NCBI GenBank assembly: GCA_021613535.1
Contig: CP075494.1
Location: forward strand, 16,182,001-16,246,000
DNA length: 64,000 nt
DNA from: Adineta vaga
Taxonomy: Eukaryota > Animalia > Rotifera
Reading direction: 5' to 3'
A program made the translations under genes and the position numbers. The notes beneath the pieces were generated by a model. The model searched no databases. It saw nothing but the letters and a program-made list of their open reading frames with translations, and was not told where the DNA came from. Each line of letters starts with the position of its first letter. The stretch's first letter is position 1. Shown here piece by piece: positions 1,681 through 63,818 of the stretch.

Positions 1681-1735
1681 TGAGGGTGTAGGTGTGAATC
1701 TCTCTTCTATATATTCACACCCACACCCACACCCA
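1681..1735. repeat. Telomere-like G/C palindrome
   Basis: TGAGGGTGTAGGTGTGAAT-ctctcttctatat-ATTCACACCCACACCCACACCC; 16-bp stem with 1 mismatch; 160 bp after the cullin stop. Confidence 0.9.
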
Positions 1736-1941
1736 GGATTTCTCTACACGACTTGCAAATGTAAAGTGAATGGAAGTTGGCGATCTATTGCTGGCAGTTG
1801 TAACAACTAAACATTTTCCTCATATTTATGTAGTTCCTCTCCGATTATAATGATCCTCTCTATTCAATAAAACTACCCTGAGTACTTATAGAATGAATTG
1901 ACGAATACATTCTATAAGAATATCTACCATCGTTCTTAATT

Positions 1942-2001
1942 TGAGGGTGATGGTGTGAGGGTGTATTCTCTCTTTAATAGTATCGCCCTCACTCACACCC
2001 T
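1942..2001. repeat. Telomere-like G/C palindrome
   Basis: TGAGGGTGATGGTGTGAGGGTG...attctctcttt...CGCCCTCACTCACACCCT. Confidence 0.85.
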
Positions 2002-2444
2002 GTTTTCGTGCTAAAACCAGATCAATTGTTAATATCGTACACTATTGCATTATAGCTATGTACAACAAATATTTGTGCATAGCTTATTTATATGGCGAAA
2101 AAAAGTGTGCTGAGTTCATCTGCATAAACGACCTGTTCTCTGCCTTTCGAAAAAAAAATTCAACTAATTTGGTTGAAGAGTCATGAAAATATTCAATTTT
2201 TTTCTCCCAGCCTATAGTGACTTTCTGGAAACTCTATATTATCTTTTTAGAAAATTGTGAGAAATGTTTTATTCGTTTTTTATTCTCATTAGTCTTAATA
2301 TAGATTCTTTTTATTTTTTAAAACGATTAGTTTATTTCTAGATTACATGTATAAAATCTCGATAAAAAAAGTATTGATTACAAAAACCTTTTGTTACGAA
2401 GTTATTTTGCATATATGCTGTTGAGCAACTTCATAAAATATTGT

Positions 2445-3443
2445 CTAATCACGATGTTCAATTGTTATCATAAAAGGTTCAGACGAACCATGTGTCCATG
2501 AACGGCAAAATTCATCCAGTTTTCGACGTACGTCAGCAGCTGATGATGAAGAATATTCGACGATTATTTCGTTTTTATCAATAAATGTCTTTTCACATAA
2601 CAGCTTTTCTCTTATATATGATTTGATTTTTTGTAGTGAGTTATTAATGGCATCAGGAGATAATGATGAATCTTTGAATTCTCTAATCTTCAAAATGCTC
2701 ACGGCATAATTACGTTTGTGTTCCAAAGGAGGGTGTAAATACATTTTTTCATTCGTCGTCTCGCTGCCATTTGAGCCGAGTGATAATTGTGATGAATTAC
2801 TAATTTGAGGATATGCTGATTGATGAATCTCTACAGTCGGACCTCGGTTAAAGCCTAAAAGTGGAGGTCGAGGATACGCGTCCATGATAGTTCTCTTAGC
2901 ATCTTCATGATTATGCAATGCGTGTTTCTCCATTTGATTTATTGTATGTTGATTACATTCAAAGATAACTATCTTTAAATCGCCATAAATCAGATAGTTT
3001 TCAGATTTTCTGGGCCATTTCGTCGATTTATCTATTGACAGATTCAGATCAAAGCCACATGACCAAAATAAAAGCTTTTGAGATGAACGATCGCAGCCGT
3101 TTATGCGACCAATAATCATATGTGATTTTCCAGCCGGAAGAGATGCTAAAGATGGCAAGGCATCATTATATTTGTTAATGATAAATGTTCTGATATCTTC
3201 CTGTGCTGATTCTGGTAAATATTTTCCCAAACAATCTTTAAAATCTTTTTGTACATTTGGTTGATTAAGATCTAATTGGAGAGGAATCGTTTTCATTTTT
3301 GGAACCGTCTCTAAATAGGCAGAAGTGCTTTCGAGCTCTTCTTGCATCAATCGATAAATAGCCGGATAGTCGCGAGACAACATCGAAGTAATACCATCAC
3401 TATGAAAAACGTGTCCAATTGTCGGATTCCATTGAGTAACCAT
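2445..3443 (-). CDS. Uncharacterised 332-aa protein, divergent paralog of 3949-4611
   Basis: Single-exon ORF. N-terminal FHSDGITSMLSRDYPAIYRLM resembles VYSDGISTHMRQHYPKVYELL of the neighbouring gene. A splice-acceptor-like tttttcag lies just before the ATG. Confidence 0.75.
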   Translation of the reverse strand: MVTQWNPTIGHVFHSDGITSMLSRDYPAIYRLMQEELESTSAYLETVPKMKTIPLQLDLNQPNVQKDFKDCLGKYLPESAQEDIRTFIINKYNDALPSLASLPAGKSHMIIGRINGCDRSSQKLLFWSCGFDLNLSIDKSTKWPRKSENYLIYGDLKIVIFECNQHTINQMEKHALHNHEDAKRTIMDAYPRPPLLGFNRGPTVEIHQSAYPQISNSSQLSLGSNGSETTNEKMYLHPPLEHKRNYAVSILKIREFKDSSLSPDAINNSLQKIKSYIREKLLCEKTFIDKNEIIVEYSSSSAADVRRKLDEFCRSWTHGSSEPFMITIEHRD

Positions 3444-4611: not shown

Positions 4612-4793
4612 ACTTTTTTTCATCATGAAAATATGAATTTTTAAAAACATTTTCTATGTTTTCCATATTGAAAAATAAAAAAAGATATCTATTTGAACGA
4701 GGTATTATCAATTGGATACCATTTTGTTTAAAATAAATGAGTAATTTAAATAGCAGTATCTAATGGAAGCGTGTTAACAATAGCAGATGAAAC

Positions 4794-4864
4794 AGGGTGT
4801 GGGTGTGAGTGTGGGTTAAGAGTAGAGCCTGATCCACAGCCATCATCACACGCCCTCACCCACT
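4794..4864. repeat. Telomere-like G/C palindrome
   Basis: AGGGTGTGGGTGTGAGTGTGGG-ttaagagtagag...-CACACGCCCTCACCCAC; 183 bp after the stop at 4611. Confidence 0.85.
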
Positions 4865-5669
4865 ATTCACATAAACAAATCTTTCTCTCTTTCATTTCTA
4901 TCATACCTCTATTTTTTCGTTATTGAATAAACATGATGAAATCACTTTTATCGTTAACGCGGAAAGGAAAGAAAACCATCATAATCAATTTGATTTTCGA
5001 TCAACATTAAAACAAGATATTAATTTCATATGTCAACATTATCTTCCAAATCTTATTCATTTACATATATTGATAATAATAATAATAATAATAATTGTGA
5101 AAACAAATGTAAATTAATTCGAAAGATTTTAAGTAATATTCAGTATTTATTAAATTTAATTTATTGTTATATAAACATTTCATTCAATCAATATGAAAGT
5201 ATTATTGATCATTTAAAGGATATAAAACAATCGTTTATTATACATTACCTTATAGATTTACTAATTTTTCTTTATTCGATCATTGGATTAAAGCTGAATA
5301 TAAACATATCCAGAAAAAGATATTTCTTTATTATATAATTTAGTACATTCATTTGATTACAAAATTCTTTTAGTTAATCTATTATCTATGAAAAAACTTT
5401 ATAACTAATTACGTCGATTTATACCAAACAACTATTATGATCATATGGTTGTTCATATATACGATCTCAAGGTTTGTCTTGTTCTATGGAATATGATGCC
5501 TATTACTTTCAGCAAGACCAGATAAAATAATTCCTGGTTTAGTTACAAGTTGTTTACATGTTTATTCTCCTCTTTTATTATCATTTCAATGTTTTTACAA
5601 TGTATTATATATTCAAATGATTTTTAAATGGTCATCAGATCAATCAATTCACGTACTATATATTAATCT

Positions 5670-5733
5670 TGACGGTGTGGGTGACATTAATGGAAAACAA
5701 GGAAAACACATTCACATATATACTCACACCCTC
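5670..5733. repeat. Telomere-like G/C palindrome
   Basis: TGACGGTGTGGGTG...ACTCACACCCTC. Confidence 0.75.
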
Positions 5734-12078: not shown

Positions 12079-14307
12079 TTAATTTATGTAGAAGTTTTGA
12101 CACTGGAGAAGAACACCGACATTGTTTGAATCATAATTTGCCACAATAATATCAGGCATATGGTCATTATTCATGTCAGCTACTGCTACCGACCATGGCT
12201 TCTGACCGACTCGGTAAGTAGCTTGATTCAGAAATGTACCATTACCTGCGTTGATAAGAACACCGATGTTGTCTAAGAGAGTGTTTGCAACAATAATATC
12301 AAGTTTGTTGTCACTATTTATGTCAGCGACTGCTAATGACATTGCACCGATTTCAGATGCATAAGTAACTTGAGAAAGAAACGTACCATTGCCTGTGTTG
12401 AGAAGGACACCGATTGTGTATGGAGTACTGTTTATAACAATAATATCAGGCATGTGATCATTATTCACATCGGCTACTACCACTGGCATTGGAACCATTC
12501 CAACTGTATAAGTAGTCTGATTCAGAAATGTGCCATTACCTGTGTTGATAAGAACACCGATGTTGTCTGAGAAAGTATTTGCAACAACAATATCAAGTTT
12601 ATTGTCACTATTTATGTCAGCTACTGCTAATGACATTGGAGAGATACCAACTGTATAAGTAGTTTGATTCAGAAATGTACCATTGCCTGTATTGATAAGA
12701 ACACTGACATCGCTTGACGCAGTATTTGCAACAACAATATCAAGTTTGTTGTCACCATTTATGTCAGCTACTGCTATTGACCGTGGGCTGCTACCAGTTG
12801 CATACCTAGTTTGAGGCAGAAACGTTCCATTGCCTGCGTTGAAAAGAACACCGACTGTGTGCGTATCTCTGCTTACGACAACAATATCAGGTTTATTATC
12901 ACCATTCATATCATCCACTGCTAATGCTACTGGTCTGTGATCAACTGTATAAACAGTGGGATCTAGAAATATGCCATTGTCTGTATTCAGAAGAACTTTG
13001 ACGCAGTACCCAAAACCGTGTGCAACAACAATATCTGGTTTGTTGTCACTATTCACGTCAGTTACTATTACTGATGTCGGACTAGAATCAACTGCATAAG
13101 TAGCTTGATCTGGAAACCTACTGCTACAATCTATCAAACATAAAAAGTTTTTCCTTGCTAGCACTCTTAGGACAGTATGCGATCATCATATCTTAAATTT
13201 CGAAGACTTTATCCTATGTAGAATTACAGCGACCAACCTGCGGTCATATTATATTATTCTTGAGAATGTTCGATGTTCCGGAACATAATTTACAGCATTT
13301 ATCTTCCATTCTGCTCGTCTTCATGTGGGATATCTCCATCGAACTGAAAATCGATCAACACATCGAGCTTTTGTGTGTCTCCTGCTAAACTTGTTAATAT
13401 TTCAAGCACTTATTATACCATCAAGAAACGCTTGCCTGTAGACTTGCATAGCTCTTCCTTGTAGAAGAACTGTTCCGACTATCAGCAAACTATTTATCTA
13501 GATTAGGTATGTTATTTTCTCTCGTCATCCCATACTCATACTCAAGATTATTAAATGATTCAAACTTCTCACCTTCAGTTACTTTCGACCAAGTCTCACA
13601 CGGAAGCTTGTTAGCGCCGCCCATTCAAAGCTAAACTCTAGAACTCATATGTTCTATCTAAGAAAAGCATCTGTTAAAGAGAACGTATTTATTAACGTGT
13701 AAACTGCCTCCTGCCCTCCTCCAATGGCTACTCATCTGTAAGATATTTGAGGGTGTGGGTATCTCCTCTTCTTTCACACCCACCCTATAGTAACGAATAA
13801 CTTGTAAGCCTCTTTATTTATCCACGATTCGAAATAACCGTGAGTTAGAAAACTGCAAATAGTCTAGTACTACGTAGAAATCATTTAGCATATCGCTCAC
13901 TTTTTGCTGATGATCTTGTTGTCGGTGTTGTTGATGACGTTGTTGATTCTGTGTGAAAAATATGTTATTAAAATGAGACAAAAAGATTAGGTTAGGTTTT
14001 GGTCATAATTGAGCTCTTCTCGATCTATTCATAATGTATCCAGATTTTAATAAATTATAATCAATAAGCTTTCATGAATTCAGATACGTTATCTCACTAT
14101 CTTGATGCATGAATGTGGATGTCTATGTGATTATCATCTCTTATCCACGCACCCATACCCACACTCACACCCTTCTTGTCTGAGTAGTTGATGTTTCTAT
14201 TGAAGTAGAGTTTTTTGGTTCAGCCTAAAATAAATAATTGAAACAAAAGTCATTTCATATTGTTTTCTTTAAATTACCTCGCAAACTTCTATTCTATTGT
14301 GCTTCAT
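12079..14307 (-). CDS. FG-GAP/VCBS repeat protein (about 7 repeats, one beta-propeller)
   Basis: Last exon 12079-13130 has ADINSDNKLDIVVAN...GNGTFL repeats after a tttgatag acceptor. A Thr/Ser-rich mini-exon lies at 13901-13948 (ESTTSSTTPTTRSSAK). Putative first exon MKHNRIEVCE near 14278-14307; the 5' structure is uncertain. Confidence 0.8.
13748..13786. repeat. Telomere-like G/C palindrome (likely intronic)
   Basis: TGAGGGTGTGGGT-atctcctcttcttt-CACACCCACCCT. Confidence 0.9.
14110..14173. repeat. Telomere-like G/C palindrome, degenerate G arm
   Basis: TGAATGTGGATG...atctctt...CCACGCACCCATACCCACACTCACACCCT. Confidence 0.75.
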
Positions 14308-14445: not shown

Positions 14446-14506
14446 TAGTGTGGGTATGAATAAATCTTATACACACTAATATCTCATTCAATCAATCACA
14501 CTCTCA
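14446..14506. repeat. Telomere-like G/C palindrome, degenerate
   Basis: TAGTGTGGGTATG...TCACACTCTCA. Confidence 0.55.
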
Positions 14507-15690
14507 AGATTAAATTCTTCTTGTCACGACGATAAGACAGAACGAATGGTGTTCGAAAAAATAACTATTCTGATAACGAATCTAACTCGTTATGAATGAC
14601 AGAAACAAATAAAGAAACGAAAAGTAAATGTTGTATGGCTATTATATTTCAAAATATAATTTACTTGCTTATAGTAAAATTATGATATATCAATTTAAGG
14701 AAATATGTTAACTAGAGACTGAACCATGTGAATAGAAGATGATGAATAAAATATCGGTGCAAACTCATTTTTTCTCAGGAAAACTAGCATTTCCTTACAA
14801 AATGTTGGTTTTCAGTGTTGTTTTGAATAGAAATCATAACATATCTTCTCTGACGCAGTATAGGATCCCATATGCTACTTAAATATTTCTTTTATGTTCT
14901 GTATTTACAGTAGATCATAATCCACATACCTTTTATAATTTTGTTCAACACTAATCTTGATAAAATGAAGCGAGCTCATTATTTTTTTTATATATATTGT
15001 TAAAGATTCAACAAATATTTCACCTATAAACAATTTGTATGTTGCTCAAAACGGTCAATAACTGTCAGTTAGTTGCGGATTATCATTCCGTAAGCGCGAT
15101 AATCGCTGATACTTTTTTCAATATTTTTTAGTGTTAAATTATGGTGAAAATCACGGCTCGTTATAAATGAAAGAGAGAGAGAGAGAGCATTAAAACCATT
15201 GGTGATAGCTGCATCGACTAATTTGGCTTGATTTACTTTGGTCTACGAATATTTATTAAAGATGACGCCATAAAAATAATCATCAGCTAATTTATTAACT
15301 AATGGAGAAGATATTACCAGTATCTAATATAATATGTTGTAACTTATTATAATCCACTTTTCTAAAGGAAAAATCAGAAAAGAACTGATGCAAAATGATA
15401 AACCGGTGGTAGCGGACACTTTTGATGAAAAAGAAGTGGTTTGGGTTATTTAGGCGAAGCAAATTGTTGCCTTCTCTAATAAATTACTAGTTTTCATACG
15501 CATCTAAAATACTTCTTCTATTCATTTATCATTTTTGTGCTCGATTAACTTAGAACGTTTCATTCAATTTCGACAAAGCATCATACAGAAAATGTAATCA
15601 TGAGTAGATTGTTAACGAATTGTATTTGATTTATAAGAGGTAATGAGATTTGTTACGGCTTGCAATTGACTATCATTTGAAAATAAATCT

Positions 15691-15776
15691 TGAGGGTGGG
15701 GGTGGTGTAGGATGGGTGTTATTTAAATACTGTAATCATTTCACATTCATGGTGAGATCCACACTCACACCCGCTC
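15691..15776. repeat. Telomere-like G/C palindrome
   Basis: TGAGGGTGGGGGTGGTGTAGGATGGGTG...CCACACTCACACCCGCTC. Confidence 0.8.
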
Positions 15777-16147: not shown

Positions 16148-16199
16148 TGAAGATGTGGATTTGTATCTTCACAATACTCACATCAACACTCACACCCTG
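16148..16199. repeat. Telomere-like G/C palindrome, degenerate G arm
   Basis: TGAAGATGTGGAT...atcttc...ACTCACATCAACACTCACACCCTG. Confidence 0.65.
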
Positions 16200-16466
16200 A
16201 ACACAAGTAACGCTCGTCGTGCCGATTCACTTTACTCTCGACTGTGAAAGACAGGTATTTTCTGCGTGTGCCAATAGTGAGACGAATTGATGTAGCAACT
16301 CTAAATACGAAGAAACGATTCAAACTTTTTTCTCACATTGGAATAAAAAAAACTTCATTAATGTTGATAATCAATTATATTACAGGAAAATGACAAAAAA
16401 AACATAGATTCAAAAATTAAAAGAATTTGTTGAAATTTTAATTTTATCCATTCTTTCAATTCATCG

Positions 16467-17545: not shown

Positions 17546-17577
17546 TGAGGGTGGGCACCATTTCAACACCCACACCT
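17546..17577. repeat. Telomere-like G/C palindrome
   Basis: TGAGGGTGGGCA...ACACCCACACCT; 160 bp beyond the stop of the minus-strand gene ending at 17738. Confidence 0.8.
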
Positions 17578-17737
17578 ATTCCTGGAAAGTCATTAAGGTT
17601 TTAGTAAAATATCGGAGGCAATGAATTGCCAATTGTACAAGAATACTTTAAAACATATCGCGATTCTCTAGATTACACCCAAACTCTTGTATAGTTTTTA
17701 GTAGTCAAACAATTCTTTAAGTGAAATTGTTAAGATT

Positions 17738-20807: not shown

Positions 20808-20991
20808 ATGCATATCAAAGGACTGCCAGAATTTATTCAGAGACTCAAACCTTCGAGTCAGACATTCGAAGAAGGATTGAACATATGTAATGATTTTGTT
20901 GATTTCTGGAAACAATTTTCGTTTATATCAGTGAAATAAATTTATAATAACGATATAGCCGGTATTCGACAAATAATAACTAATTCACTAC

Positions 20992-21060
20992 GGGTAGGTG
21001 TGAATATGGTGTGGGTGTGGTTCTGAATATACCTGAGTCTATACTCTTAACACACATCCA
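20992..21060. repeat. Telomere-like G/C palindrome, degenerate C arm
   Basis: GGGTAGGTGTGAATATGGTGTGGGTGTGG...CACACATCCA; 185 bp after the stop at 20807. Confidence 0.75.
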
Positions 21061-21445
21061 TGGCCAATAAGTCATCAGTGTAATATCAATTTCATGCTTG
21101 AATAATCTTAAATTATTTTTACAATAGAAGAAGATTCTCTGACTATAAACATATATGTAAACTTTTAATATTTTATTGTATTTATTTGTAATGCTAGTTA
21201 TTCACATTCGAGGATTATAGCTCAGTTCTTTCTCATAGAAATCGTGTTATTAACTATCATTAGATTTGAGTTTCTCGACTTCGATTATCTCTCAGTCAAG
21301 TTTTAGGGAAAATTATGTCTTGTAGTTGAAACGTTTTTTTTCCATCAATCAGAGAAGTGCGGACACACAAACAAGCAAGTACAAGCGGACAGTTTATGCT
21401 TGCAAGACTCTTCTCCAGAAGAAAGAGAAAATCACAATTTCATCT

Positions 21446-21499
21446 AGGGTGAGTGTGGATGTTCGCTCGTAACTGACCTTTTACCCTCGCCCACACCCA
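21446..21499. repeat. Telomere-like G/C palindrome
   Basis: AGGGTGAGTGTGGATG...ACCCTCGCCCACACCCA. Confidence 0.8.
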
Positions 21500-21912
21500 T
21501 ATTTGTATTAATTTGAAAGAGATCAATAAATATCTTTGAAATCAATGATGTTCACCGTAAAGATATTTTAATTACATTTGAAATACTTATATATTCTTTG
21601 ATTTCATTGAAAAAGATTGAACATTTCTTCGGAAGAATTTTGTCAATAAAAACAAAGACTAATATTGATCAAATTTCTTTTTCTTTTAATTGAAAAATGA
21701 TATTTGATGAACACCGATATGTTTATTTTGTCGATCAATATATGAACTTCATATCAAATGTCCAAAACAAATATAAAGAATGTGAGAAAAATCTTTAAGA
21801 TTATTTGTTTTTCTTATGTTTTGTAGATGCAAAGAATTGTCAAAGAAAAAGTTTTGTTTAACAATTCTGATTGAAACGCTTCCATTCACTACTAAAAACG
21901 TTTCTATTCTAA

Positions 21913-24900
21913 ATGAAATTGATTATTAATTTCAACGTTTGTTTCTTCACATTGTTTCTAATTTATGGAACAAAAGGTAAGCTTTGAAATATTTTCTCAA
22001 TATAATCAATAAGATTTAGAATTCTTTTTTAATGAGACTTCTAAAAAATTTTCGTCCCATCGACAAAACCATTCGTTTTAAACAGTTGACGAATTTCCAA
22101 ACAATGACATTGATTTCGAACAGAGACAAACTACTTTTATTCTCGATATGATTTCAATGATAAAAGAGAAAGATCAAGGTGATTTCGATAACTATTAGTT
22201 GTAATATTATGATTTCAGATTGTAACACAACATTAATTCAGTCAAAGTAAAGATTGTCTTCACATCGAATTTCTACACTTTGAGATTGATTGAACAATCG
22301 ATGAGCGCGTAAATTTATGTACTTTCCAACGACAAAATCTCTTTTTAACCTAATCAAGTCTTTATCTCATCTATTTTAGCTATTCCATACAATCAGCCCA
22401 AACTCTGTTCTAACGCGTCATGGGATATCAATGCTACTACTTTTGCGTGGAACAATACTGTTGCTGTATATCCCTACTCAGTCTTTGTCAATAGAGATAA
22501 TACTGTGGTCTCTGTCAGTAGAAATAAGAGTGTAATCCTCGTTTGGTTTGATGGAAGTAGCAGTCCCTTAGTGACGAATAGTACTGTTCTCGATGACAAC
22601 TGGAGTGTTTTTGTTACAGATGACAATGAAATCTATTTTGATACAAAATACTCTTCAAAAAACTCTACAAATAATTTCACCATCTATCAAATAGAAAAAT
22701 GGACATTAAATGGAACGAAACTTTCGTCAAATCTCACAGTTACAAGTCAATGTGGCGGTCTTTTTATTGATTTGAACAACACAATCTATTGTTCCTTGTA
22801 TAGCCTTCATACAATCGTTAGTAAATCGTTGAACAATTCTGGAAGCAACTTTGATACTGTCGCTGGTAATGGTACTGCAGGTGGAACATCGATACAACTC
22901 AATAGACCTAGTGGAATGTTCGTGACCACCAATTTTGAATTATATGTAGCTGATTATGGCAATAGTAGAATTCAAAAATTTCAACTGGGCAACTTGTTAG
23001 GAACAACAGTGCCAATTAATGTATCGACAGGAAATAGCTCACTCAAGAATCCATCAGGAGTTGTCATGGATGCTGATGGTTATCTATTCATTTTGGACTC
23101 AGGGAATAATCGAATTGTCGCAGAAAGTGTCAATGGTTTCCGTTGTGTGGCAGGTTGTTCGCAAGTGAAGGGCTCAGAAGCGAACCAATTTAAGGAAGCA
23201 TGGGCTCTGAGTTTCGATAATCTAGGAAATATCTTTGTCATGGATACAAAGAACAGTCGAATTCAAAAGGTTCTTCTCGCTTCAAACTCATGCGGTAAGA
23301 CCATAACATGCAATTTCTTCGTTTATTAAAAATTTCGAAGACACGAACATACAGGAGAAAATAATATAAGCTTTTGAGCAAACAGATTTCCTCTGAACAA
23401 GTACTTTTCTCTAAAGATTGTTTAGGTTATGCTAGCATCTATAATTCAAAAGAGTTCAATAATCAATCGATCTTATCCATCATTATTTGCGAACAAGGAA
23501 ACACTTGTCGGGAAATGATTATAAAATTATTCTTGGTGTGAACAATTAGAGACCAATTTGTCATTCCTTTCTTCATTTCATTCACTTCTTTTTAACATTA
23601 AATCAGGCATAAAAACATTCTCTAGATAATACTAAGTTATAATATCGCAAATATATCATTCAAGACAAAGAGAGTATTATAAATAAAACGGTGAAAAAAA
23701 TATCTAGATAAAATCGTGTTTCCCTCATCATTCGCACAGCATCGTTCATATATTATAGACAATATGTGGGTGCGGGTTTAAAATACGGATTCTTTATATA
23801 ATATCCATGCCACACAGATATATACTATCACTCACATCTACAATCCAGATACAGTCTCATGTGATATTTTTTCCTTGCAATATTTTGCCCATGTCATGTT
23901 ATTTTTTGAAACGATTTGTTCACGATACTGCGTCCTGCAACATTCAGCCCCTTCATATTCTAGATCAACCCACGTCAACCCATTTACCAACAACAACTCA
24001 ATTATTGACATCAACCGAATTACCAACAACAACGCAGTCACCCACGTCAACCCAGTTACTAACGTCAACCCAGTTACCAACGTCAACCCTATTACTAACG
24101 TCAACCGAACTATTGGCGACTACCCAACCATTAACGACCACAGAATCAACTACAAGCATCACATCCACATTACCTTCGACAGCGATAGAAACCACCGGGC
24201 AGAGTACAACCGAACAAGCAGCTTCAACAGTCGACGAATCAATTTTAACAACACAAATCAAATCAGATGCGTCAACAGATCATCTGTGTAAGTTAGTTTT
24301 CTCGTACATATCATTAGGAAAGATGATTCGATTTCTATTCATCGAATAATATTTCTATTTTGCATTGATTAACATAAAGCAAAATAAACTATCACAGATC
24401 TTTTACTCTATAAGAAAATGTATTTTGTAAATTAGATCAACTGACTAGTGAATCTTTATCAACACTAATTTCTTCGTCTCAACTGAGTAAGTGAATTTCT
24501 CTTTTTTTCTATGTGATTGTTAGATTCATTTTATGTTTAGTTTTAACAAGTTCAACATCAACAACAGTTATTTCCACTACACAAACAAGTATTTCGAATT
24601 ACAAAGGTACAAAATTCTTTTGTTTATACATCACTTGTGCACATAAATCTTTCTAATTTGTTCATTCTTTTTAGAAACATCAACAATAAATCAAATTAAC
24701 ACAAGTTTATTATGTACGTCTATTATGAGTTTGATATTAGACATAATTCTAATTTATTTGTTTAGATTTAACTTCGAGACAATCTACAATAATGATGAAT
24801 GGTTTGATTTCTTAAATATATATTTTGTTTATTTAAAATTTCAAACAATTTTAGTAAATTCATCTCAAGATTCTTTTATTACATTAACTTGTGCTAATCA

Positions 24901-27274: not shown

Positions 27275-27334
27275 TGAGGGTGTTGCTTAGATTCAATTGT
27301 AAATACGCCACACGCACCCTCACCCACACCTTCA
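27275..27334. repeat. Telomere-like G/C palindrome
   Basis: TGAGGGTGTTG...CCACACGCACCCTCACCCACACCTTCA; 92 bp after the GPCR stop. Confidence 0.85.
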
Positions 27335-33364: not shown

Positions 33365-33406
33365 GAGGGTGTGAGTGAAGAAAATAGCATTACCCACACC
33401 CACCCT
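33365..33406. repeat. Telomere-like G/C palindrome
   Basis: GAGGGTGTGAGTG-aagaaaatagcatt-ACCCACACCCACCCT. Confidence 0.9.
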
Positions 33407-34094
33407 TACGATCCTAAACATCATCAGTAAATTCCATCTTACTTCTTCTAAACGTTTTCAATACTATATTTCTTATATCTCATTCGATGCGCCATGAAGA
33501 GCTCTACAAGATGGTGTATCTGATTTCTTAATTCAGACATAGTCACTTTATCCGACATGGTCCTTTAATTTACCCCAATTTCAGTCAATCGGAAAATGTA
33601 TGTTATGTTTTTAAAGAGCATTGACAGTGCTGACTCATCAACGTGATCGCTCGTCCATGATTGCATAGAGAACGAAAAAAGTGAGAAAAAAAGACAAGAC
33701 ATAGATATCAGGAGGAAGTAGTCTAGTTTCAAATGCTGTTCTTTTACTTTCGGTCTAAGGCGAGAGTGGGCGCGAAGGACGCAATTCGTAATATGAGACC
33801 GAAATAAGAAAGAAGGGTAACAACAGAACAGCAAGCGAAAAATAAAGAGAAAAATAGTGAGACAAGCAATAAACGGACATGGAAAAACGAAAAAGCTAGT
33901 AGTGTATAAATATAATCGACGAATGTACCACCAGCGTGACATTGAAAAACGAGTACAATCATCACAAAAAATAAGTTAGGTATGTGTGTTTATCAGAAAT
34001 TATCAATTATATGAGCGCAATCATGAGAAAATCTTTTAGACAGAAAATAATCTTCAGAAAGTGGTAGTATCGTCTCTCGTATATCAACACACAA

Positions 34095-36760: not shown

Positions 36761-36817
36761 TGAGGGTGTGGGTGTGTGAGAGTTTGGATAAAGAAAGAAT
36801 ATCTTCACCCACATCCA
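36761..36817. repeat. Telomere-like G/C palindrome
   Basis: TGAGGGTGTGGGTGTGTGAG...atatctt-CACCCACATCCA; 136 bp after the stop at 36625. Confidence 0.88.
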
Positions 36818-37539
36818 ATAGATAATAAATACTATATTGTATTTCAATATAGTAAAAAATCAACAAAAAAATGCGGAAATCTCCAGTTTTATCCGAGAGT
36901 TATATCTAATTCAAAAGAGCATGAGAAAGATGGGCCATTCTAGAATGTCTATAGATAGCAAAATTATCATGAGATATTTTTTTCAATGAACATATGGCTT
37001 CTCTTGACTGTTGCATATCCAAGAGGATTTTTAGGTCGAAAATAGTTTATATTTGAACTCTCCGTCTTCTTAGTTCCTTTTGTATAATATATCATTTTAT
37101 GTCTCGGAAAATTCTCTATTGAATGTTATATAACATACGGAATTTTATTCGACTTTGATATAAAGATTCTCTTACGAGAAAGGCAATATAACAATTTTTC
37201 CCAAGAAAAAAACAGGGAAAAATCAGTATTTTTATAGTATAATTCAGGAAGGATTCGTTCAATGAGGCTCATCTTCGAACTCAATCGAGATGACGACGAG
37301 ACTAAATTGTGTACAAAATTTCATCTCAATTTGACTCTCCTTGCAAATATTATCATATAAACCGACGGACACACTGACCGATACTATAATGTGTTCTAAC
37401 GTTTTGAGTACAATAACCGAAAGAATGAACGTATTATTTTATTAAATGACATGGTGTGAATTTATATCGCACAGATACATCATTATACATCAAAACTGAT
37501 TATCAAACCTGTTTTTATTATTATTCAAAAATTCATCTG

Positions 37540-40088: not shown

Positions 40089-40134
40089 TGGTGTAGGTCA
40101 AGATATATCTTCTTCATCCACACTCACAATCTCA
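40089..40134. repeat. Telomere-like G/C palindrome, degenerate
   Basis: TGGTGTAGGT...atatcttctt-CATCCACACTCACAATCTCA. Confidence 0.65.
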
Positions 40135-40564
40135 AGATCACTAAATTTTTATTTTCATTTACTGATACTTTTGATTCAGAAAGAAGTTTTCATATTTCTT
40201 ATCCACTACCGTTTTCCTACTGTCTAAAAAAATCATGAACTATTTGCTTTTGTCGTCAGTGGAAGAAAACATAAAGATATGAAAAAGATCTTGATCGTTC
40301 ATTTGTACTCTGACAGAGTTCATGATCAGTTTTAGGTAGTTTCCTACTTTGCGTTGCAAGTCTTCTTCGATGGAAATATCTTTTTAAGCCTTCAGCAACA
40401 ATAATAACTCTTTACACATAAAAGAAACAAAGTCTGCCCTTTATATAGGAACAAACTTCGAGTAATTATTAATCCTAGTTTAATGAAGTAGTTATCAATA
40501 AAATCTGTTTTAGATGACCTTTATATGAGAATGAAAAAATAATGAATCTTAGGTTTCTATTGAT

Positions 40565-43640: not shown

Positions 43641-43685
43641 AGGGTATGAGTGTGGGTGAAGAAGAGATACATTGACCCACACCCT
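43641..43685. repeat. Telomere-like G/C palindrome
   Basis: AGGGTATGAGTGTGGGTG-aagaagagatacattg-ACCCACACCCT; spacer core in reverse orientation (AAGAGAT). Confidence 0.9.
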
Positions 43686-43789
43686 ACAAATCACGTGATA
43701 TCATATCATATCGTTGGATATTTCTTATAATCAATTATTGATGTAAATTCGTGTGTCTGAAAGTAGAGATAAACTGTCATTTATTAGTT

Positions 43790-45178: not shown

Positions 45179-45331
45179 ATTCGAAGTTACTTTTCCTATC
45201 GTCAAAAGAACGATTTATATAATTTTCGAATGACAAAATATGTTATTGCACCATTGATTGGCATATACATGAGTCATACATAGCGACTTGTGTAATACCA
45301 AAATATTTATCAGAAATTTTGAATTAAAAGA

Positions 45332-45434
45332 AGGGTACAGGTGTGAGTATATGAGTGTGGCGGTGGTTGAGGTTGAAGCGTGGGTATGGGTGCTACAGTC
45401 ATTTAAGATCTCTACCCACACCCACACCCACCCT
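45332..45434. repeat. Telomere-like G/C palindrome, long G arm
   Basis: AGGGTACAGGTGTGAGTATATGAGTGTGGCGGTGG...GTGGGTATGGGTG...gatctct-ACCCACACCCACACCCACCCT, ending about 10 bp before an acceptor/ATG. Confidence 0.9.
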
Positions 45435-45445
45435 TTTTTCATAGA

Positions 45446-49005: not shown

Positions 49006-49053
49006 AGAAGATGTGAGTAAGGAACAAAACCACCACATCTGTGCACACCCTCA
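49006..49053. repeat. Telomere-like G/C palindrome, degenerate
   Basis: AGAAGATGTGAGT...CACATCTGTGCACACCCTCA. Confidence 0.5.
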
Positions 49054-49609
49054 CTATTTAAAAGGTGTGAATGTGACTAGATGGATTATAGCTGTGAATG
49101 AATACTGTTACTTTTTTACCTCGATTTTCATCGAGGTTTAAAAGAACATGTTCTCAGAAATATTTCATACAAAGATTTTTTTCAAAGAACAGGATTTGAT
49201 AGGCGGATCTTGCATTAAATATTTTCTGTCCTCTTGTCAATAAAAAATCGGATTGAACCCAAATATCGTCTAAAACAAAAGCCGCTTTCCATAATTAGAA
49301 AAGGTTAATTTCAGGTAATACCCTTATATTGACTAAAACTAGATATCTAAAAGTATTTCAAATTAATTTTTCTTTCATGTTAATTATTGTATGAAAACGC
49401 TCTATTCATTTTAATAAATTTCTAGCATGGCAACTTTGTTGTTTTTACCAAATATTATACTAGATTTAATCAGTATCAATCTTTGTTGTGTGACTATTGG
49501 TGTATCATTTATTTTCATGTTCTTAATCTTCTCATTCGTCATCAATTAACACAATCCAAAGAAAATGTTCATTTTCTTCTTAATTTTAATATGTATTTGA
49601 GTCCATTTA

Positions 49610-49658
49610 AGGATGGGTGTGGGCGAGAATACCCATATCTTCAATCTCACCCACACCT
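49610..49658. repeat. Telomere-like G/C palindrome
   Basis: AGGATGGGTGTGGGCGAGA...atatcttc...TCTCACCCACACCT. Confidence 0.85.
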
Positions 49659-50102
49659 GTAGCTGTCACAAAGTGACAGGAGATATACAGAAGTACAGTT
49701 CTGTATCCATCATCACAACATATTCTTTTATAAGTTATAAATCAACACTAGATTTCTCTCTAACACGATTTAGAGGAAATCTATGTTTTTTTTTTATAAT
49801 CAAATGAGGACAGATTAACGTCTTTTTTCTCATGAAATATAAAAGTATGTTTTTATGTAATCACGTGTCTATGATGTGACATGAATTTTCACTTCATCAC
49901 TATAAGCTAGATGTTAACAATAGAAGATAGCGCCATCTGACAAAAAGAAAAAGTTGAATTCGATTTGCAAAACAATTTTGTTTTCTTCGTTATGTTGTTA
50001 AAAAATGCATGTTGAGTCAGCACATCTATACTTGAAAATTCCAACAACATGAAGACAGATATATAGACGATAATAATTATCACAAAAGAAATTTAAATAC
50101 AG

Positions 50103-51826: not shown

Positions 51827-51877
51827 TGAGAGTGTGGGTGCGAGACCACACTTTTAACCCACACCCTCATCCACCCT
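51827..51877. repeat. Telomere-like G/C palindrome
   Basis: TGAGAGTGTGGGTG...ACCCACACCCTCATCCACCCT. Confidence 0.88.
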
Positions 51878-53119
51878 ACCGAAGTCTATGTCTTCTTCGT
51901 GCCATATCTTTATTTCTTATAACTTGTCAAGATTATCCATTATGTGTAACAGAAGAATTAAGTATTTATAAGGCCAGTCTGTTATACTCACACCCACAGT
52001 AAATGCGTTTTTGACGCATCTAAGCGTTTCTAGTGGATAAGGCAGAACGTCAGTGCGTATCTTCACTCGTCCTCACATTTATTTCCACTCTTGAAAAATG
52101 AATATTCAGTAAAATATGGTCTTATTCGTTGTATGAACACCATGAGGCTTTCAAAAATCTTGATAACGTATTATTCTATGAGTAAGTCCACTATAGCGAG
52201 GTTCATTTCTAGAGAGTCAGCTTTTTGCAAAAAGTGCTCCGTTGCATTGAAAATCTCATTTGTATGGAACTGTTCACGATTAGAAGTTCTAATGTAGCAA
52301 AATATGAAACTTGTCTACCATTTCTTGTGAAAAATTGTTGGTTAATTGTGCAGAAAATGTTATAAAAAGCAAATTAGATGATCAATAAAAATTTCTTTTG
52401 GGTTTGACGGGCGTGAGTCATGAAATTTACTGTCCTTCACATCTTTGGTGTCTTGTATGGAAAAAGTGAGCAGTATAATGAGAGGTGATGTTGACCTTGA
52501 TTTCTGTTTTGTTTTAAAAGAAGTTGTACATGTGAGTTTTTTCAAATATATTGCAAGATTTTTGCATTATCTTTCTGTAAAAGTAAAATTTTTTAAGAAT
52601 GCAGATGAAATGTAAGATATCTAAGCAACGGATTCGCTTAGGTATGCGTTCCAACTCTGGTCACACTACTTTCAACTGGAAATGGAATAGCTTCATCGGT
52701 TTCCTTCGTAATCTCAATATCTCGCTCATCCACATCCTCACTCAGTATTAGCGGAGTATTACAGTACAGGAGTAGTGTTCTTTTCTTCTTGGATTTTATC
52801 TGGATAAAACCTGAATTTCTAAGAAAGTACAAAAAAGAACTGAAGTTGCTTTCAGGTGAGGACGCTTTTTCTGTTTTGTAGAAAGCTGTTTTTTTAGAGT
52901 ATAGAGTATGCGGTAGTTACTTTTAATATCTATCTGTCCTTGGATATTTTTTCTTCCTAGTGTAACAATAATTACTGAGATAAGCCTTGCATTCTTTTGT
53001 TTGCTCTTTTTTTCTTGTTTCTTATCTAATAGGTATAGACATAGATGATAAAGATGCGATGCTCGAGATGAAATCTATTACAAGAGTACAAACACTCATT
53101 GTGACTATCTTCCAACAAA

Positions 53120-53745: not shown

Positions 53746-53775
53746 CGTGGATGAAGGCTGAACACCCACACCTTC
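53746..53775. repeat. Telomere-like G/C palindrome, short
   Basis: CGTGGATGAAGG...ACACCCACACCTTC; 102 bp after the stop at 53644. Confidence 0.6.
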
Positions 53776-53789
53776 TATAAAGGTACCAG

Positions 53790-54993: not shown

Positions 54994-55090
54994 TGAAAGT
55001 TAATACACATTGTTTGACTAAAATCATAATAAACAAGCGCGATTATTCTTTTAAAATAAATTTATGAAATAAATCATTGTTATTGACATA

Positions 55091-55149
55091 GAGGGTGTGG
55101 GTGGATGGATGTATCTCTTTTTCTTTCATACCTTCACCCATCCACCCTT
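55091..55149. repeat. Telomere-like G/C palindrome
   Basis: GAGGGTGTGGGTGGATGGATG-tatctcttt...-CACCCATCCACCCTT; 98 bp after the defensin stop. Confidence 0.9.
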
Positions 55150-55676
55150 CTTTGTTTGATAATAAAAAAAGGCGCTAGTAGTATATTTTGCAACTGTTTA
55201 AAACTTCTTTTCATCTTTTGTTAGATAGTGTTAAACAAGTCACATCCTACTTTCTTTGCTCTGAACTGGTTCGTATTACATATATGTATGTTACTTTCTA
55301 TTATCCATCTGATTCTCGATTTAAAAGAATAAAAGGAATCTTGACAAAATACGGATGACAAAAGACCAGCTGCTATTGAAAAGCCATCGGCAAGCGATTC
55401 ACGTCTTCATCTAAGTGTTCGTCACTTTCCTTGTCTTACTCCACAAACATCGCAATCTCAAAGACAGTATGTTGTTTACGCATCCCACAGTGTTTTGGGT
55501 GGTTTTGACAGATTTTAGGGTTAAAGGATGGGATTTAGAGCAAATTTGATGTTTGAAATCGATAGAGTTCATCAAATTCTACTTGGAACCAGTGAGACCA
55601 GAATTGGAACACATATGTGTGCGAATTTGTTCAGGAAAATATCGAATCTGTATCTAAGGTGTCCTGCGTCCCGCCG

Positions 55677-55836: not shown

Positions 55837-56424
55837 TTAATCAACACGTTTGAAATAACGATGAGCTTTAACCGAACCACATGTTAAATCCTTTGAAAAA
55901 ACAGAAATGATTATAAAAGATGGAAAGAAATGAAATTTAACATACAACTTGTTGTTGACCTTGATCATTTATATAACGAACAGCTGAACATTCTTTTCCA
56001 TCTTTTCCTTTCATTGTATGTTCCATTTTATTCCCTTGAATTCGAACAATTGCCTAAAAATATTAAATGAAAAAAAAAGACGAAAAAAATATAAATTTCA
56101 GATCGAACTTTGACTTCACGTCCATCCATTGTTGTTTCTTCAAATTCAACATCGGGTTGAAACTCAACTGTTTTTGTTCTCAATGTACTTTCGGATCGAA
56201 TTGTCCATTTTCCGCCATTTTCATTAATAATAAGACGAGATTTCATATTTTTAACTGCCATACGTTTCGCCATTCCAACGCCAAGTTCTTTTAAAAATTC
56301 GTCCATATTTTCATCATTTATCTAAATGAAAAATAAGAAGAATGTCTCTAAAATAGATTCATAAGAATAAATTTACTTGATTCCATGTTCCTTTCAATGC
56401 TTCGATATCTTTGCTATTCGACAT
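55837..56424 (-). CDS. Fatty acid-binding protein (FABP/lipocalin family)
   Basis: 4 exons: MSNSKDIEALKGTWNQ / INDENMDEFLKELGVG...FEETTMDGREVK / AIVRIQGNKM...QQV / DLTCGSVKAHRYFKRVD*. Confidence 0.93.
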
Positions 56425-61597: not shown

Positions 61598-61754
61598 TCC
61601 CTCGACTGAAACGAGTGTCATATGAAAAAAAGGTTTGCATGTATGTATGCAGAGGTGTAAGATGATCTGCGGCGGCTAGAAAATTTATAAAAAGAAAATT
61701 TTTTTTCAAATGGAAAACATCCTTTTTTCCTTTTCTGGAAGAAAGGGTTATAGC

Positions 61755-62281
61755 CAGAGTTGCCAGACGTTCCGGATTTTACGGAACTCTTCCGGCTTCC
61801 GGATTTCTTCCAGATTTTCGACTTTTACATCTAGTATCTCTGGATACAGATGATGAGAATGATACAGATTTAAAAGTAATACTTTTGGAAAAGAAATTCA
61901 ACCTGATCAACTGTGAACGATGTTTTTACCGATTGAGTTAACGCCTTCACGTTCATCCCGTTTACATAAATTAATTTATTTCTTACTATCGATCCAATGT
62001 AGTAATACATTTGTTGAAAATATTATCTCACGAATGAAACATTTATTCGATGATAAATGAAATCGATTGTCAGCAAAATTTGTTAGATCTCAATTAAAAA
62101 CTCCTTTCAATTGTTTCTTATTGAGTAAAGAAGTTTGAATTCGAATCTTTTCATCGAAACCAAAATTGCTCAAGTTTATTTAGTCTAATGAAAACAAATT
62201 GTTGAAAAAATGTGTTAATTTAATCTTGGAAGACCTTTTCGGCATTTTCCGGATTTTTTACTTTTACATCGGGCATCTCTG
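61755..62281. mobile_element. Non-autonomous hAT DNA transposon
   Basis: TIR CAGAGTTGCCAGACGT / ACATCGGGCATCTCTG; perfect 8-bp TSD GTTATAGC (61747-61754 and 62282-62289); subterminal TCCGGA repeats. Confidence 0.88.
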
Positions 62282-63772
62282 GTTATAGCATCATAAATAC
62301 CGTCGTTAAAATTCGTAAAGTTTGTTTGTATAGTCCAATCAGATTGCAGCGTTTTATAAATCAATAAAAACTTAACGATGGTCATCAGGAAAGGGTCGAC
62401 TTGTGGGTTTTCGGGGTCGAGGAACTCGAATCTAATGTTAATTTAAGGTGAGTCATTATTTGTGACCTATTTTGCTCCGTCTCTCCCAAGAAATTCAATA
62501 TTTGACGGATTTTTGTTCAAATTCGATCAAAAGTTATCGATAATAATGAATTTGAACCTGATACTATTTACGACTTCCGACGTACAGTATTTAGTAATAA
62601 CTCCATAAAAAGCTGTAGTTCAATTAATCGGGAAAATATATACGAGACTTACATCAATTTTGAATAAATAAATTTGCGTCACCGAATACTAGACGTTAGA
62701 TCATCTGATATAGTTTTCCGAGAAATATGTGGATAAAAATTGAATGAATGCTTGTGGTTTTATTGTTGGCTCTAGCTAGGCATTAAAAATAGAAGTAACA
62801 TTCCAGACATGAGAAAAACTAGTCTAGTCGAATATTCTCTAGTTCTAGCGACTCATAAAATAGTACCTCGTCTATTTAGGTTCTTTCCGAGAATCATAGT
62901 AATACAAAGTCAGTGCCTTTTGAAGAAAAGACCAAAGGAAATTCACTTATTTGTTTTGAAACTGAATCAAAAGTAGACGAAACAATGAAGGCGTTCATGT
63001 TAACGGCTAGACGTTGATTTAGAGAGTGATACTTCAGAATATGGATTTGAATGACTTTCACGTGGTTTGGACGTTTCTTCGGAGGCACTTAATCGATGAT
63101 CTGCGAGAACGAATCTGACAAAGTTCTGTTTCCTGGAAATGAAAAGGAGAATGAAATATACAGTAGAAACAACGCGATCAGATCCATGAATATTTATAAA
63201 CAATACTTGTTTTTGATCTTCTCTTTCTGTAAACGATTTAATGATAACATGAAATGGTGAAAAGATGAAAAACACTTGTAAAAAGCTTTTATGTGTAATA
63301 AGTGCTCCTGGTCATAATGTTTGATGGATAAACACTTAGACTGTGTTACTCATAAATATAATTTGTAAGCAGAGTCATATATGTGACGAAGTTTGAATTA
63401 CAACGAATGGTAACCAAAATAAAACTATTCCTATCTATTTCTGTGTGAAGTATAATCGCATATAGATAATATTCTTATTCTATGGGGGAAACTCTAGATG
63501 AAGTTTCGTGATTTATTTTCGAAATGATATCAAATAGCTGAATGCGTATTTATATTCGAATTCAAATTAGGCAGCTCATGTGCTTTTCACACATTACCGG
63601 TAAGGTTTCTTTTTTTTATCAAATGATAAACCATTTGGATAAGTCAATTGATATGATTCATTTCCACCAGCAATAATTTCATCTTGTGAACAACCTTTAC
63701 ACCAACGCATAATTCGATGATTCATGTTATCTGAAAAATAGATTCGTTCTAATTCATCTACAACAACACCTC

Positions 63773-63818
63773 GAGAGTGTGGGTGTGGATGATTAGCTAG
63801 TCCTTACCCCACACCCAC
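63773..63818. repeat. Telomere-like G/C palindrome
   Basis: GAGAGTGTGGGTGTGGATG...ACCCCACACCCAC. Confidence 0.85.

What the first reader, a model, noticed from the sequence alone, without database searches (positions are those of the whole stretch)
1681..63818. Dispersed family of head-to-head telomere-like palindromes punctuating the gene landscape
Seen: about 26 two-armed elements, at 1681, 1942, 4794, 5670, 13748, 14110, 14446, 15691, 16148, 17546, 20992, 21446, 23765, 27275, 33365, 35210, 36761, 40089, 43641, 45332, 49006, 49610, 51827, 53746, 55091 and 63773, plus half-sites. All read G-rich arm (TGAGGGTGTGGGTGTG-like), 10-50 nt spacer, then C-rich arm (CACACCCACACCCTCA-like). They stand out in about 70% AT DNA, always in G-then-C polarity and never in a coding exon I could model. 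Arm length varies in roughly 6-nt units and the flanks are unrelated, so they do not look like copies of one conventional MITE. Established (from memory): bdelloid telomeric repeats are TGTGGG (Adineta vaga) and TGAGGG (Philodina roseola), and G-then-C is the end-to-end fusion orientation. Inference: a genome-punctuation system built from telomeric DNA. Options are (a) binding sites for a telomere-repeat-binding protein acting as insulator or terminator, (b) pre-positioned break/telomere-seeding or re-ligation sites for desiccation-induced breaks, since a cut in the spacer leaves both ends with a correctly oriented G-rich 3' seed, or (c) scars of telomere-healed fragments rejoined end to end. 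I know of no description of this element.
Basis: partly seen in the sequence, partly recalled or inferred. Interest (0 to 1): 0.93.

Follow-up and report, generated by a model that had tools for sequence, protein, structure and literature searches.

The report
Telomere-armed hairpin repeats in a rotifer
The window holds about two dozen copies of a very short hairpin repeat whose two arms are made of the animal's own telomere repeat; it is a genome-wide family shared by several bdelloid rotifers, and looks like DNA that spreads by copying rather than a proven gene-punctuation system.

Summary
All 26 listed places have a G-rich arm, a spacer and a C-rich arm. About 19 are clear and 7 are degenerate. 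The window has 20 G-then-C pairs against 1.0 expected. A strict two-arm pattern occurs 708 times in the 100.8-Mb genome against 5 in reversed polarity, mostly within a few Mb of contig ends. First readers of this scan noted the same palindromes in at least eight other windows of this genome.

The elements are not independent scars. The spacers fall into families: T1 has 149 copies, T2 189 and T3 223, each against about 20 in controls. Both orientations occur equally, and the core-to-arm junctions are fixed. Arm length varies by hexamer number, and the two arms of one element do not co-vary. Outer ends match ATCTTG+AGGGTG to a graded extent, even in copies with perfect cores. No target-site duplication is visible.

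None of 44 elements lies in a long ORF. They show no preference for 3' ends or gene boundaries and are not introns as a rule. The same architecture occurs in Adineta steineri, Rotaria and environmental contigs.

Best reading: short non-autonomous foldback repeats with telomeric arms, probably copied into DNA breaks by telomere-repeat-primed synthesis. No function is shown.

The parts
1679..1736 (+). clear element, CT-rich (T2-type) core
   Evidence: DNA hairpin -15.9 kcal/mol, z -5.4
1942..2001 (+). clear element, T2-like core
   Evidence: hairpin -12.8, z -4.8
4794..4866 (+). clear element with T1 core at 4816-4832 (1 mismatch)
   Evidence: listed among T1 hits
5670..5733 (.). element with long (about 40 nt) spacer
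13748..13786 (+). clear short element, T2 core
   Evidence: many other genomic contigs match its arms (loose ends at 13751/13783)
14110..14177 (.). degenerate G arm, strong C arm
14446..14509 (.). weak element, both arms eroded
15691..15776 (.). element with 34-nt G arm and about 40-nt spacer
16148..16204 (+). degenerate element; its C arm abuts the 5' end of a 135-nt dispersed repeat
17546..17580 (.). short clear element with CTTGAGGG end
20989..21062 (-). strong G arm, T1 core in reverse, eroded C arm
21446..21502 (.). clear element
23765..23850 (.). G arm clear, C side weak
27275..27334 (.). clear element, right end CTTCAAGAT
33365..33411 (.). clear element
35210..35266 (+). clear element, T2 core
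   Evidence: hairpin -14.3, z -3.0
36761..36818 (-). clear element, T2-like core reversed
40089..40135 (+). weak element, T2-like core
43641..43686 (-). clear element; perfect T2 17-mer on the minus strand
   Evidence: listed
45330..45438 (.). compound element: long G-rich stretch, then C arm
49006..49057 (.). degenerate G arm, clear C arm
49610..49660 (+). clear element, T2-like core
51827..51883 (.). clear element
   Evidence: z -3.4
53746..53776 (.). very short, weak element
55090..55153 (+). clear element, T2 core
63773..63819 (.). clear element
   Evidence: z -4.7

Best explanation
These are copies of a few families of very short (about 35-110 bp) non-autonomous foldback repeats. Each has a short conserved core flanked by inverted tracts of the species' own telomeric hexamers, so the G-rich tract always comes first on either strand. 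They are most likely selfish or neutral DNA that accumulates in non-coding DNA near chromosome ends. Shown: the family structure, the fixed core-to-arm junctions, the variable number of hexamers, the variable outer ends, the absence of visible target-site duplications, the exclusion from ORFs, and the presence in several bdelloid genera. Inferred: new copies arise by template-directed synthesis at DNA breaks. A 3' end carrying, or aligned by microhomology to, telomere-like sequence would be extended on an existing copy or on its transcript. The enzyme could be a repair polymerase, telomerase, or the reverse transcriptase of endonuclease-lacking Penelope-like elements. The new C-rich end would then be joined to the other break end.
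For: Polarity is 708 against 5 genome-wide and 20 against 1.0 expected in the window. Core families at up to 2 mismatches, with reversed-pattern controls: T1 149 against 18, T2 189 against 24, T3 223 against 21, of which 41 are perfect. Forward and reverse counts are equal: 78/71, 96/93 and 111/112. In 20 T1 and 20 T3 loci the core meets both arms in the same register, while arms range from about 6 to more than 50 nt and flanks are unique except for one duplicated pair. The arms of one element pair no better than arms taken from different elements (z=0.6). That argues against selection for the hairpin and against snap-back origin. Upstream of the outermost AGGGTG, the match to ATCTTG falls off gradually (G 56%, T 52%, T 52%, C 30%). 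Copies with a perfect T3 core still end at different points. That looks like variable start or stop on a template, not decay of a fixed terminal repeat. No direct repeats are seen beside 16 elements with both canonical ends. One copy of a 135-nt repeat is cut short exactly where a G arm begins and does not resume after the element (locus L005). The same architecture and ATCTTGAGGG ends occur in A. steineri, Rotaria sordida, Rotaria sp. Silwood2 and nine AT-rich metagenome contigs. Known precedents: endonuclease-lacking Penelope-like elements attach to G-rich overhangs through (ACACCC)n or (TCACCC)n tails (PMC6431247, PMC8557442), and telomerase-made repeats plus telomerase-RNA copies are inserted at breaks in vertebrates (PMC8537989, PMC2246262).
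Against: No empty site, polymorphic insertion or new copy was seen, so mobility is inferred from family structure only. No RNA data could be laid on the region, so a transcript template is unsupported. Hexamer slippage in a conventional terminal inverted repeat could also give variable arms. The only true telomere junction available (C4 left end) does not start with CTTGAGGG. The L005 truncation is a single case.
Confidence: 0.5

Rival explanations
1. They are ordinary miniature inverted-repeat transposable elements (or mini foldback elements) moved by a DNA transposase that recognises the ATCTTGAGGGTG ends. On this view the telomere likeness of the arms is mimicry or coincidence, and arm length varies by replication slippage.
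For: There are inverted ends with a shared terminal motif in Adineta, Rotaria and metagenome contigs. There are several core families with the same ends, as in MITE families served by one transposase. Flanks are unique. Terminal-inverted-repeat transposons dominate the small transposon load of A. vaga (PMC8494291).
Against: No target-site duplication is visible. Ends are incomplete and differ even in copies whose 17-nt core is perfect. Arms differ several-fold in length within one family. No partner with a transposase was looked for or found.
Confidence: 0.17
2. They are functional cis-elements. They could be paired binding sites for a telomere-repeat-binding protein acting as insulators or terminators. 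Alternatively they could be pre-set break or telomere-seeding sites, because a cut in the loop leaves both ends with a G-rich 3' seed.
For: The architecture, polarity and end motif are kept across bdelloid genera. The elements are excluded from ORFs. In several window cases they lie 50-100 nt after an AATAAA. Two pentapeptide-repeat gene clusters, one in the window and one in A. steineri, are bracketed by a C arm and a G arm.
Against: Density per kb is the same in convergent, divergent and tandem gaps. Many intervals of 200-600 bp between elements hold no gene (table). There is no compensatory pairing between the arms. T1 core copies differ from their consensus by a mean of about 1.3 of 17 positions (from the mismatch counts), similar to the arms by eye, as expected for decaying repeats. 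Elements are not kept beside paralogous segments.
Confidence: 0.13
3. They are independent scars, each marking two broken DNA ends that were healed by telomerase and then fused head to head. On this view the segments between them are captured fragments.
For: G-then-C is the fusion orientation. The arms carry the same unit mix as a real telomere. The two arms of an element are independent in length and sequence. There is one truncated repeat abutting a G arm.
Against: Conserved cores with fixed junction registers sit between the arms in hundreds of loci. Arms abut long open frames less often than nearby control positions do, so genes are not cut at them. There is no significant compositional change at the elements.
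Confidence: 0.07
4. They are structured spliceosomal introns or introner-like elements. The G arm would supply GTGAG-type donors, and the C arm a pyrimidine tract with an AG.
For: A few copies read GT...AG, for example 1680-1736. One A. steineri copy lies at the 5' end of a predicted intron of an FG-GAP gene.
Against: Open reading frames on both sides are no longer than at shifted control positions (median 25 against 28 codons). In the A. steineri and Rotaria loci where the element pairs were mapped against called gene ranges, every clear copy but one lies between gene ranges; in the other A. steineri loci the clear telomere-like arms are also intergenic.
Confidence: 0.03

Closest known systems
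Foldback (FB) elements and MITEs (from memory; a foldback-like insertion in bdelloids is mentioned in PMC2861651)
   Same: Inverted arms are built from short tandem units whose number varies between copies and between the two arms. There is a small central part of a few types. The elements are non-coding and dispersed, with unique flanks.
   Different: The arms are the host's telomeric repeat. The elements are only 35-110 bp long. No target-site duplication is seen, and the ends are variably incomplete even in young copies.
Interstitial telomeric repeats inserted at double-strand breaks, including TERC-ITS (PMC2246262, PMC8537989)
   Same: Short telomere-like tracts lie at internal sites, are inserted in one step without duplication, and are sometimes joined to a short templated non-telomeric piece.
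   Different: Those are single tracts in one orientation and are rare (41 TERC-ITS loci in 22 vertebrate species). Here two opposed tracts flank a core, there are hundreds of copies per core family, and the rotifer telomerase RNA is unknown, so the origin of the core is untested.
Athena/Terminon endonuclease-lacking Penelope-like elements of bdelloids (PMC6431247, PMC8557442, PMC3846280)
   Same: They have C-rich reverse-complement telomeric tails, (ACACCC)n or (TCACCC)n, that pair with G-rich overhangs. They are subtelomeric. They offer a ready enzyme for priming on telomeric 3' ends.
   Different: Those elements are kilobases long, encode reverse transcriptase, carry a hammerhead motif, and are capped by telomeric repeats in direct rather than inverted orientation. 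No Rfam hammerhead match was found here.
Telomere-bearing elements (TBE1) of Oxytricha (from memory)
   Same: They are transposons whose inverted ends contain the host telomeric repeat.
   Different: In TBE1 the C-rich repeat is at the 5' end of the element, which is the opposite polarity. TBE1 encodes a transposase and makes a duplication.
Bacterial REP/BIME palindromes and integron attC sites (from memory)
   Same: They are short intergenic imperfect palindromes scattered between genes.
   Different: No one-per-gene spacing was found and no associated recombinase was examined. Here the centre is conserved and the arms vary, which is the reverse of attC.

Membership tests
MITE / terminal-inverted-repeat DNA transposon | terminal inverted repeats with a defined end | tested here: met
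   The shared end is ATCTTG+AGGGTG and its complement, but the match is graded.
MITE / terminal-inverted-repeat DNA transposon | target-site duplication of constant length | tested here: not met
   No direct repeats are seen beside 16 elements with both canonical ends or in the T1 and T3 loci.
MITE / terminal-inverted-repeat DNA transposon | autonomous partner with the same ends and a transposase | not tested
   Arms are too frequent for a simple paired-end search. The window ORFs scanned with Pfam (19 ORFs of about 125 aa or more, not all ORFs) show no transposase.
MITE / terminal-inverted-repeat DNA transposon | empty sites in other haplotypes or species | not testable with these tools
   Records of this genome are left out of the look-ups. 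No close paralogous flanks were found.
Foldback elements | arms made of tandem short units, variable and unequal | tested here: met
   Arms carry 1 to about 15 or more hexamers and are unequal within elements.
Foldback elements | 9-bp target-site duplication | tested here: not met
Telomerase-made interstitial telomeric insertions (ITS / TERC-ITS) | repeat identical to the species' telomere | tested here: met
   TGTGGG, TGAGGG and TGGG units occur both in the arms and in the C4 terminal array; see also PMC8494291.
Telomerase-made interstitial telomeric insertions (ITS / TERC-ITS) | adjacent piece copied from telomerase RNA | not testable with these tools
   The rotifer telomerase RNA is not known to me and was not identified here.
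Telomerase-made interstitial telomeric insertions (ITS / TERC-ITS) | single tract in one orientation | tested here: not met
   Two opposed tracts are the rule.
Endonuclease-lacking Penelope-like elements (Athena/Terminon) | hammerhead motif next to a C-rich telomeric tail, and a reverse transcriptase gene | tested here: not met
   No Rfam family matched at the gathering threshold in the window, and none matched at E up to 10 around 16100-16420. No reverse transcriptase domain was found in the ORFs scanned.
End-to-end telomere fusion scars | nothing conserved between the two tracts, variable junction register | tested here: not met
   The core families have fixed registers.
Spliceosomal introns / introners | flanked by coding exons in one frame-compatible strand | tested here: not met
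   Flanking open frames do not exceed those at control positions; there is a single predicted exception in A. steineri.
Gene-cassette array (integron-like) | one element per gene boundary, associated with a recombinase | tested here: not met
   Density is equal across gap types. Many gene-less short intervals exist and the GC partition gives p=0.066. No recombinase was examined.

The most novel reading that the evidence does not exclude
The elements are the genomic record of a bdelloid break-repair route. In it, broken chromosome ends or incoming DNA fragments are first given telomeric repeats. They are then bridged by a short templated core copied from an RNA or from another element, using telomerase or a Penelope-like reverse transcriptase. 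If so, every palindrome marks a healed break, and the route could also be how foreign DNA is stitched into subtelomeres.
Probability: 0.2. Interest if true: 0.9.

Novelty: new variant of a known kind. Interest (0 to 1): 0.6.

Why it matters
Bdelloid rotifers survive massive chromosome breakage and carry more foreign genes than any other animal, yet how broken or foreign DNA gets joined is unknown. Published work counts TGTGGG hexamers near chromosome ends. In the papers I could read, I found no mention that these hexamers are organised as hundreds to thousands of head-to-head hairpins with conserved cores. If these are only a foldback repeat family, they still need to be added to rotifer repeat libraries. 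They inflate 'interstitial telomere' counts and break short-read assemblies. If they are made at breaks, they give a countable, datable marker of telomere-primed repair that can be tested in existing irradiation and desiccation lines.

Tried and rejected
1. Intron hypothesis. This was my first guess, from GT...AG readings. The best splice models and open frames on both sides are no better than at control positions, so I rejected it as a general rule.

2. Terminator or 3'-end hypothesis. Several window elements lie shortly after an AATAAA downstream of long ORFs. In 264 kb, however, the density is equal in convergent, divergent and tandem gaps. Rejected.

3. Cassette or compositional segments. 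The partition at the elements gives p=0.066. Not supported.

4. Selection for the hairpin, or snap-back origin. There is no excess of within-element complementarity.

5. ORF truncation at the arms. The arms abut long open frames less often than controls do.

6. RNA evidence. The one run search found only DNA-like contig sets, and the laid contigs gave no transcript information. A 'joint' from 13760 to 14151 rests on 22 nt of arm sequence and is a cross-match to another element.

7. Rfam gave nothing at the gathering threshold and nothing meaningful around the 135-nt repeat. No tRNA was found.

8. Exact-protein look-up of a window gene was not on record.

9. Paralogous segments were searched for empty sites, but similarity stops short of the elements.

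10. A gapless inverted-repeat finder misses most elements, because the arms are out of register.

11. The N4CMT methylation motif paper had no bearing.

12. The Terminon paper (requested as PMC5850863) and the 2007 Athena paper could not be read, so an earlier description there cannot be excluded. The 2005 paper that I recall as first reporting foldback elements in bdelloids was not turned up by a search of the held library.
Full report
WHAT THE WINDOW IS

The window is 30.7% G+C. It lies at 16.18-16.25 Mb of a 16.93-Mb contig in a genome of 100.8 Mb in six contigs. It encodes animal receptors of the 7tm_1 family and an EGF-domain piece. It also encodes genes of bacterial flavour: a 1439-aa FG-GAP/VCBS protein, a second FG-GAP gene, and a divergent pair of pentapeptide-repeat genes. 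The best named relatives of two of these proteins are from Adineta ricciae, A. steineri, Rotaria and Didymodactylos.

THE OBSERVATION

- A simple composition rule finds 20 G-then-C pairs in the window. The expectation is 1.0 (maximum 5) in 100 simulations that keep trinucleotide statistics. The five C-then-G pairs are accidents of neighbouring elements.
- I count about 19 clear and 7 degenerate elements.
- As single DNA strands, thirteen of them fold into hairpins of -5 to -16 kcal/mol, with z-scores from -1.3 to -5.4.
- In the whole genome a strict pattern (two exact 9-mers, 8-38 nt apart) occurs 708 times in the G-then-C order and 5 times in the reverse order.
- The listed places crowd towards contig ends. 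On contig 1 there are none between 2.2 and 11.5 Mb.
- First readers of this scan noted the same palindromes in at least eight other windows of this genome. Those are unchecked notes, not support.

THEY ARE A REPEAT FAMILY, NOT INDEPENDENT SCARS

The spacers are not arbitrary. Three cores recur:

- T1, a 17-mer beginning TTAAGAG, has 149 places at up to two mismatches, against 18 for the reversed pattern.
- T2, CT-rich and ending in TTCAC, has 189 against 24.
- T3, containing TTAGATAGATGTA, has 223 against 21, with 41 perfect copies.

Each core occurs equally in both orientations. I fetched twenty loci each of T1 and T3. In them the core meets both arms in the same register, so the core and inner arms were copied as one piece. 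Flanks are unique except for one duplicated pair. In the window, two elements are T1 and about a dozen are T2-like.

WHAT VARIES

Within one core family the arms range from about 6 to more than 50 nt, through different numbers of hexamers, and the two arms are often unequal. The arms of one element are no more complementary to each other than arms of different elements (mean local score 9.85 against 9.70, z=0.6). So nothing suggests selection for the stem, or an origin of one arm as a copy of the other.

The outer boundary is graded. Next to the outermost AGGGTG, the preceding bases match ATCTTG with falling frequency: G 56%, T 52%, T 52%, C 30%. Copies with a flawless T3 core still end at different points. 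That is not what decay of a fixed terminal repeat looks like. It is what variable starts and stops on a template look like.

I saw no target-site duplication. One copy of an unrelated 135-nt repeat is cut off exactly where a G arm begins and does not resume after the element (locus L005).

WHERE THEY SIT

I analysed 264 kb: the window plus twenty 10-kb stretches from two subtelomeres.

- None of 44 elements lies in an ORF of 150 aa or more, although such ORFs cover 33% of the DNA.
- Their density per kb of gap is the same between convergent, divergent and tandem ORFs (0.31, 0.29 and 0.23). The impression from the window that they follow poly(A) signals therefore does not generalise.
- They are not flanked by open frames more than shifted control positions are, and they abut long open frames less often than controls do. 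They are thus neither introns as a rule nor break points inside genes.
- Cutting the window at the elements does not explain G+C significantly better than shifted cuts (p=0.066).

OTHER SPECIES

Annotated loci of A. steineri, Rotaria sordida and Rotaria sp. Silwood2 carry the same G-then-C elements. Many share the CTTGAGGG and CCCTCAAG ends, and some have CT-rich cores. Some Rotaria and A. steineri copies have a near-perfect G arm of about 100 nt beside a shorter, eroded C arm. All but one lie between called genes. The exception sits at the start of a predicted intron of an A. steineri FG-GAP gene.

A 21-kb A. ricciae locus had none. Nine AT-rich metagenome contigs hold well-formed copies, six of them with the (A)TCTT extension before GAGGG. 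The architecture is therefore a bdelloid feature, not a quirk of one assembly.

RELATION TO REAL TELOMERES

Only one of the twelve contig ends finishes in a telomeric array (C4, left end). That array mixes TGTGGG, TGAGGG and TGGG units, as the arms do. Its junction with unique DNA does not begin with CTTGAGGG. This is one case against the idea that this motif is simply how telomerase starts.

HOW IT MOST LIKELY WORKS

Shown: these are copy families with a conserved core and telomeric arms of free length, no visible duplication, variable ends, and a non-coding, end-of-chromosome distribution.

Inferred: new copies are made by template-directed synthesis at DNA breaks.

- A 3' end that carries telomeric repeats, or aligns by a few bases, pairs with the C-rich arm of an existing element or of its transcript.
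- That end is extended through the core and the second arm.
- The product ends in C-rich repeats and is then joined to the other end.

This accounts for the fixed inner junctions, the free arm length (any register of pairing between repeats), the graded ends, both orientations, the lack of a duplication, and the L005 truncation.

Enzymes with the needed habits are known in bdelloids. Endonuclease-lacking Penelope-like elements prime on G-rich overhangs through C-rich tails (PMC6431247, PMC8557442, PMC3846280). Vertebrate telomerase has left telomeric repeats plus copies of its own RNA at old break sites (PMC8537989, PMC2246262).

I hold this reading at about 0.5. An ordinary transposase-driven MITE with slippage-prone arms is the main rival (0.17). 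A functional role, as protein binding or as a break or seeding site, is neither shown nor excluded (0.13).

NOVELTY

[quoted passage not shown] I found no description of the head-to-head arrangement or of the cores. Two key papers on Athena and Terminons, requested by id, were not held, and a 2005 transposon survey that I recall was not found by search, so priority there cannot be excluded. I class the finding as a new variant of a known kind: foldback or MITE-like repeats, or break-site telomeric insertions.

LIMITS

- No RNA data, no empty sites and no population data were available.
- Gene positions rest on ORFs and on other species' annotations.
- Family counts are lower bounds at two mismatches.

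Noticed in passing
window 16203-16336 (+): A 135-nt dispersed repeat with a constant 5' end. At least 40 scored copies (88 candidates) occur genome-wide at 82-95% identity. In other copies it runs on into TTTTCTCAC followed by C-rich telomere-like repeats. It is reminiscent of the 3' tails of Athena/Terminon elements, but no hammerhead match was found in Rfam. In the window its 5' end touches the C arm of element 16148-16204.
   Followed up: partly
window 17738-19126 (-) and 19416-20807 (+): A divergent pair of pentapeptide-repeat genes (462 and 463 aa, 42% identical to each other). The best named relatives are in Adineta, and other hits are on unnamed metagenome contigs. The pair is bracketed by a C arm (17562-17580) and a G arm (20989-21024). 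A three-gene cluster of the same family in A. steineri (L032 10001-15256) is bracketed in the same way.
   Followed up: partly
window 6621-10940 (+) and 12079-13164 (-): Uninterrupted FG-GAP/VCBS ORFs (1439 aa with 27 FG-GAP_3 stretches, and 361 aa). They belong to a large family in this genome, with paralogues at 64-69% DNA identity. These are typical horizontally acquired gene candidates.
   Followed up: partly
window 23940-24131, inside ORF 23807-24349 (+): A run of C-rich near-repeats (units such as CGTCAACCCA) that encodes a repetitive protein with no Pfam match. It is not a telomere-like arm, but it trips composition-based arm finders.
   Followed up: no
window 55915-56006 and 61734-61814: Two unrelated inverted repeats with 11-12-nt perfect arms (AAAAGATGGAAA... 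and TCTGGAAGAAA...) and 60-70-nt loops. They are not telomere-like.
   Followed up: no
G000 contig ends (L054-L065): Only 1 of 12 contig ends (C4, left) actually terminates in a telomeric array (about 110 nt). The other eleven end in unique sequence, although the assembly paper reports telomeric repeats at every scaffold extremity.
   Followed up: partly
L066 16037-16233 (Rotaria sordida) and L069 11987-12143 (A. steineri): Elements whose G arm is a near-perfect array of about 100 nt, while the C arm is shorter and eroded. This suggests that the two arms can differ in age or in mode of synthesis.
   Followed up: no
L078 and L084 (C2:15.53 Mb, C4:0.38 Mb): Two T3 copies share about 60 nt of right flank by eye but have unrelated left flanks. 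The similarity did not reach the BLAST cut-off. It hints at recombination or rearrangement at the elements.
   Followed up: no
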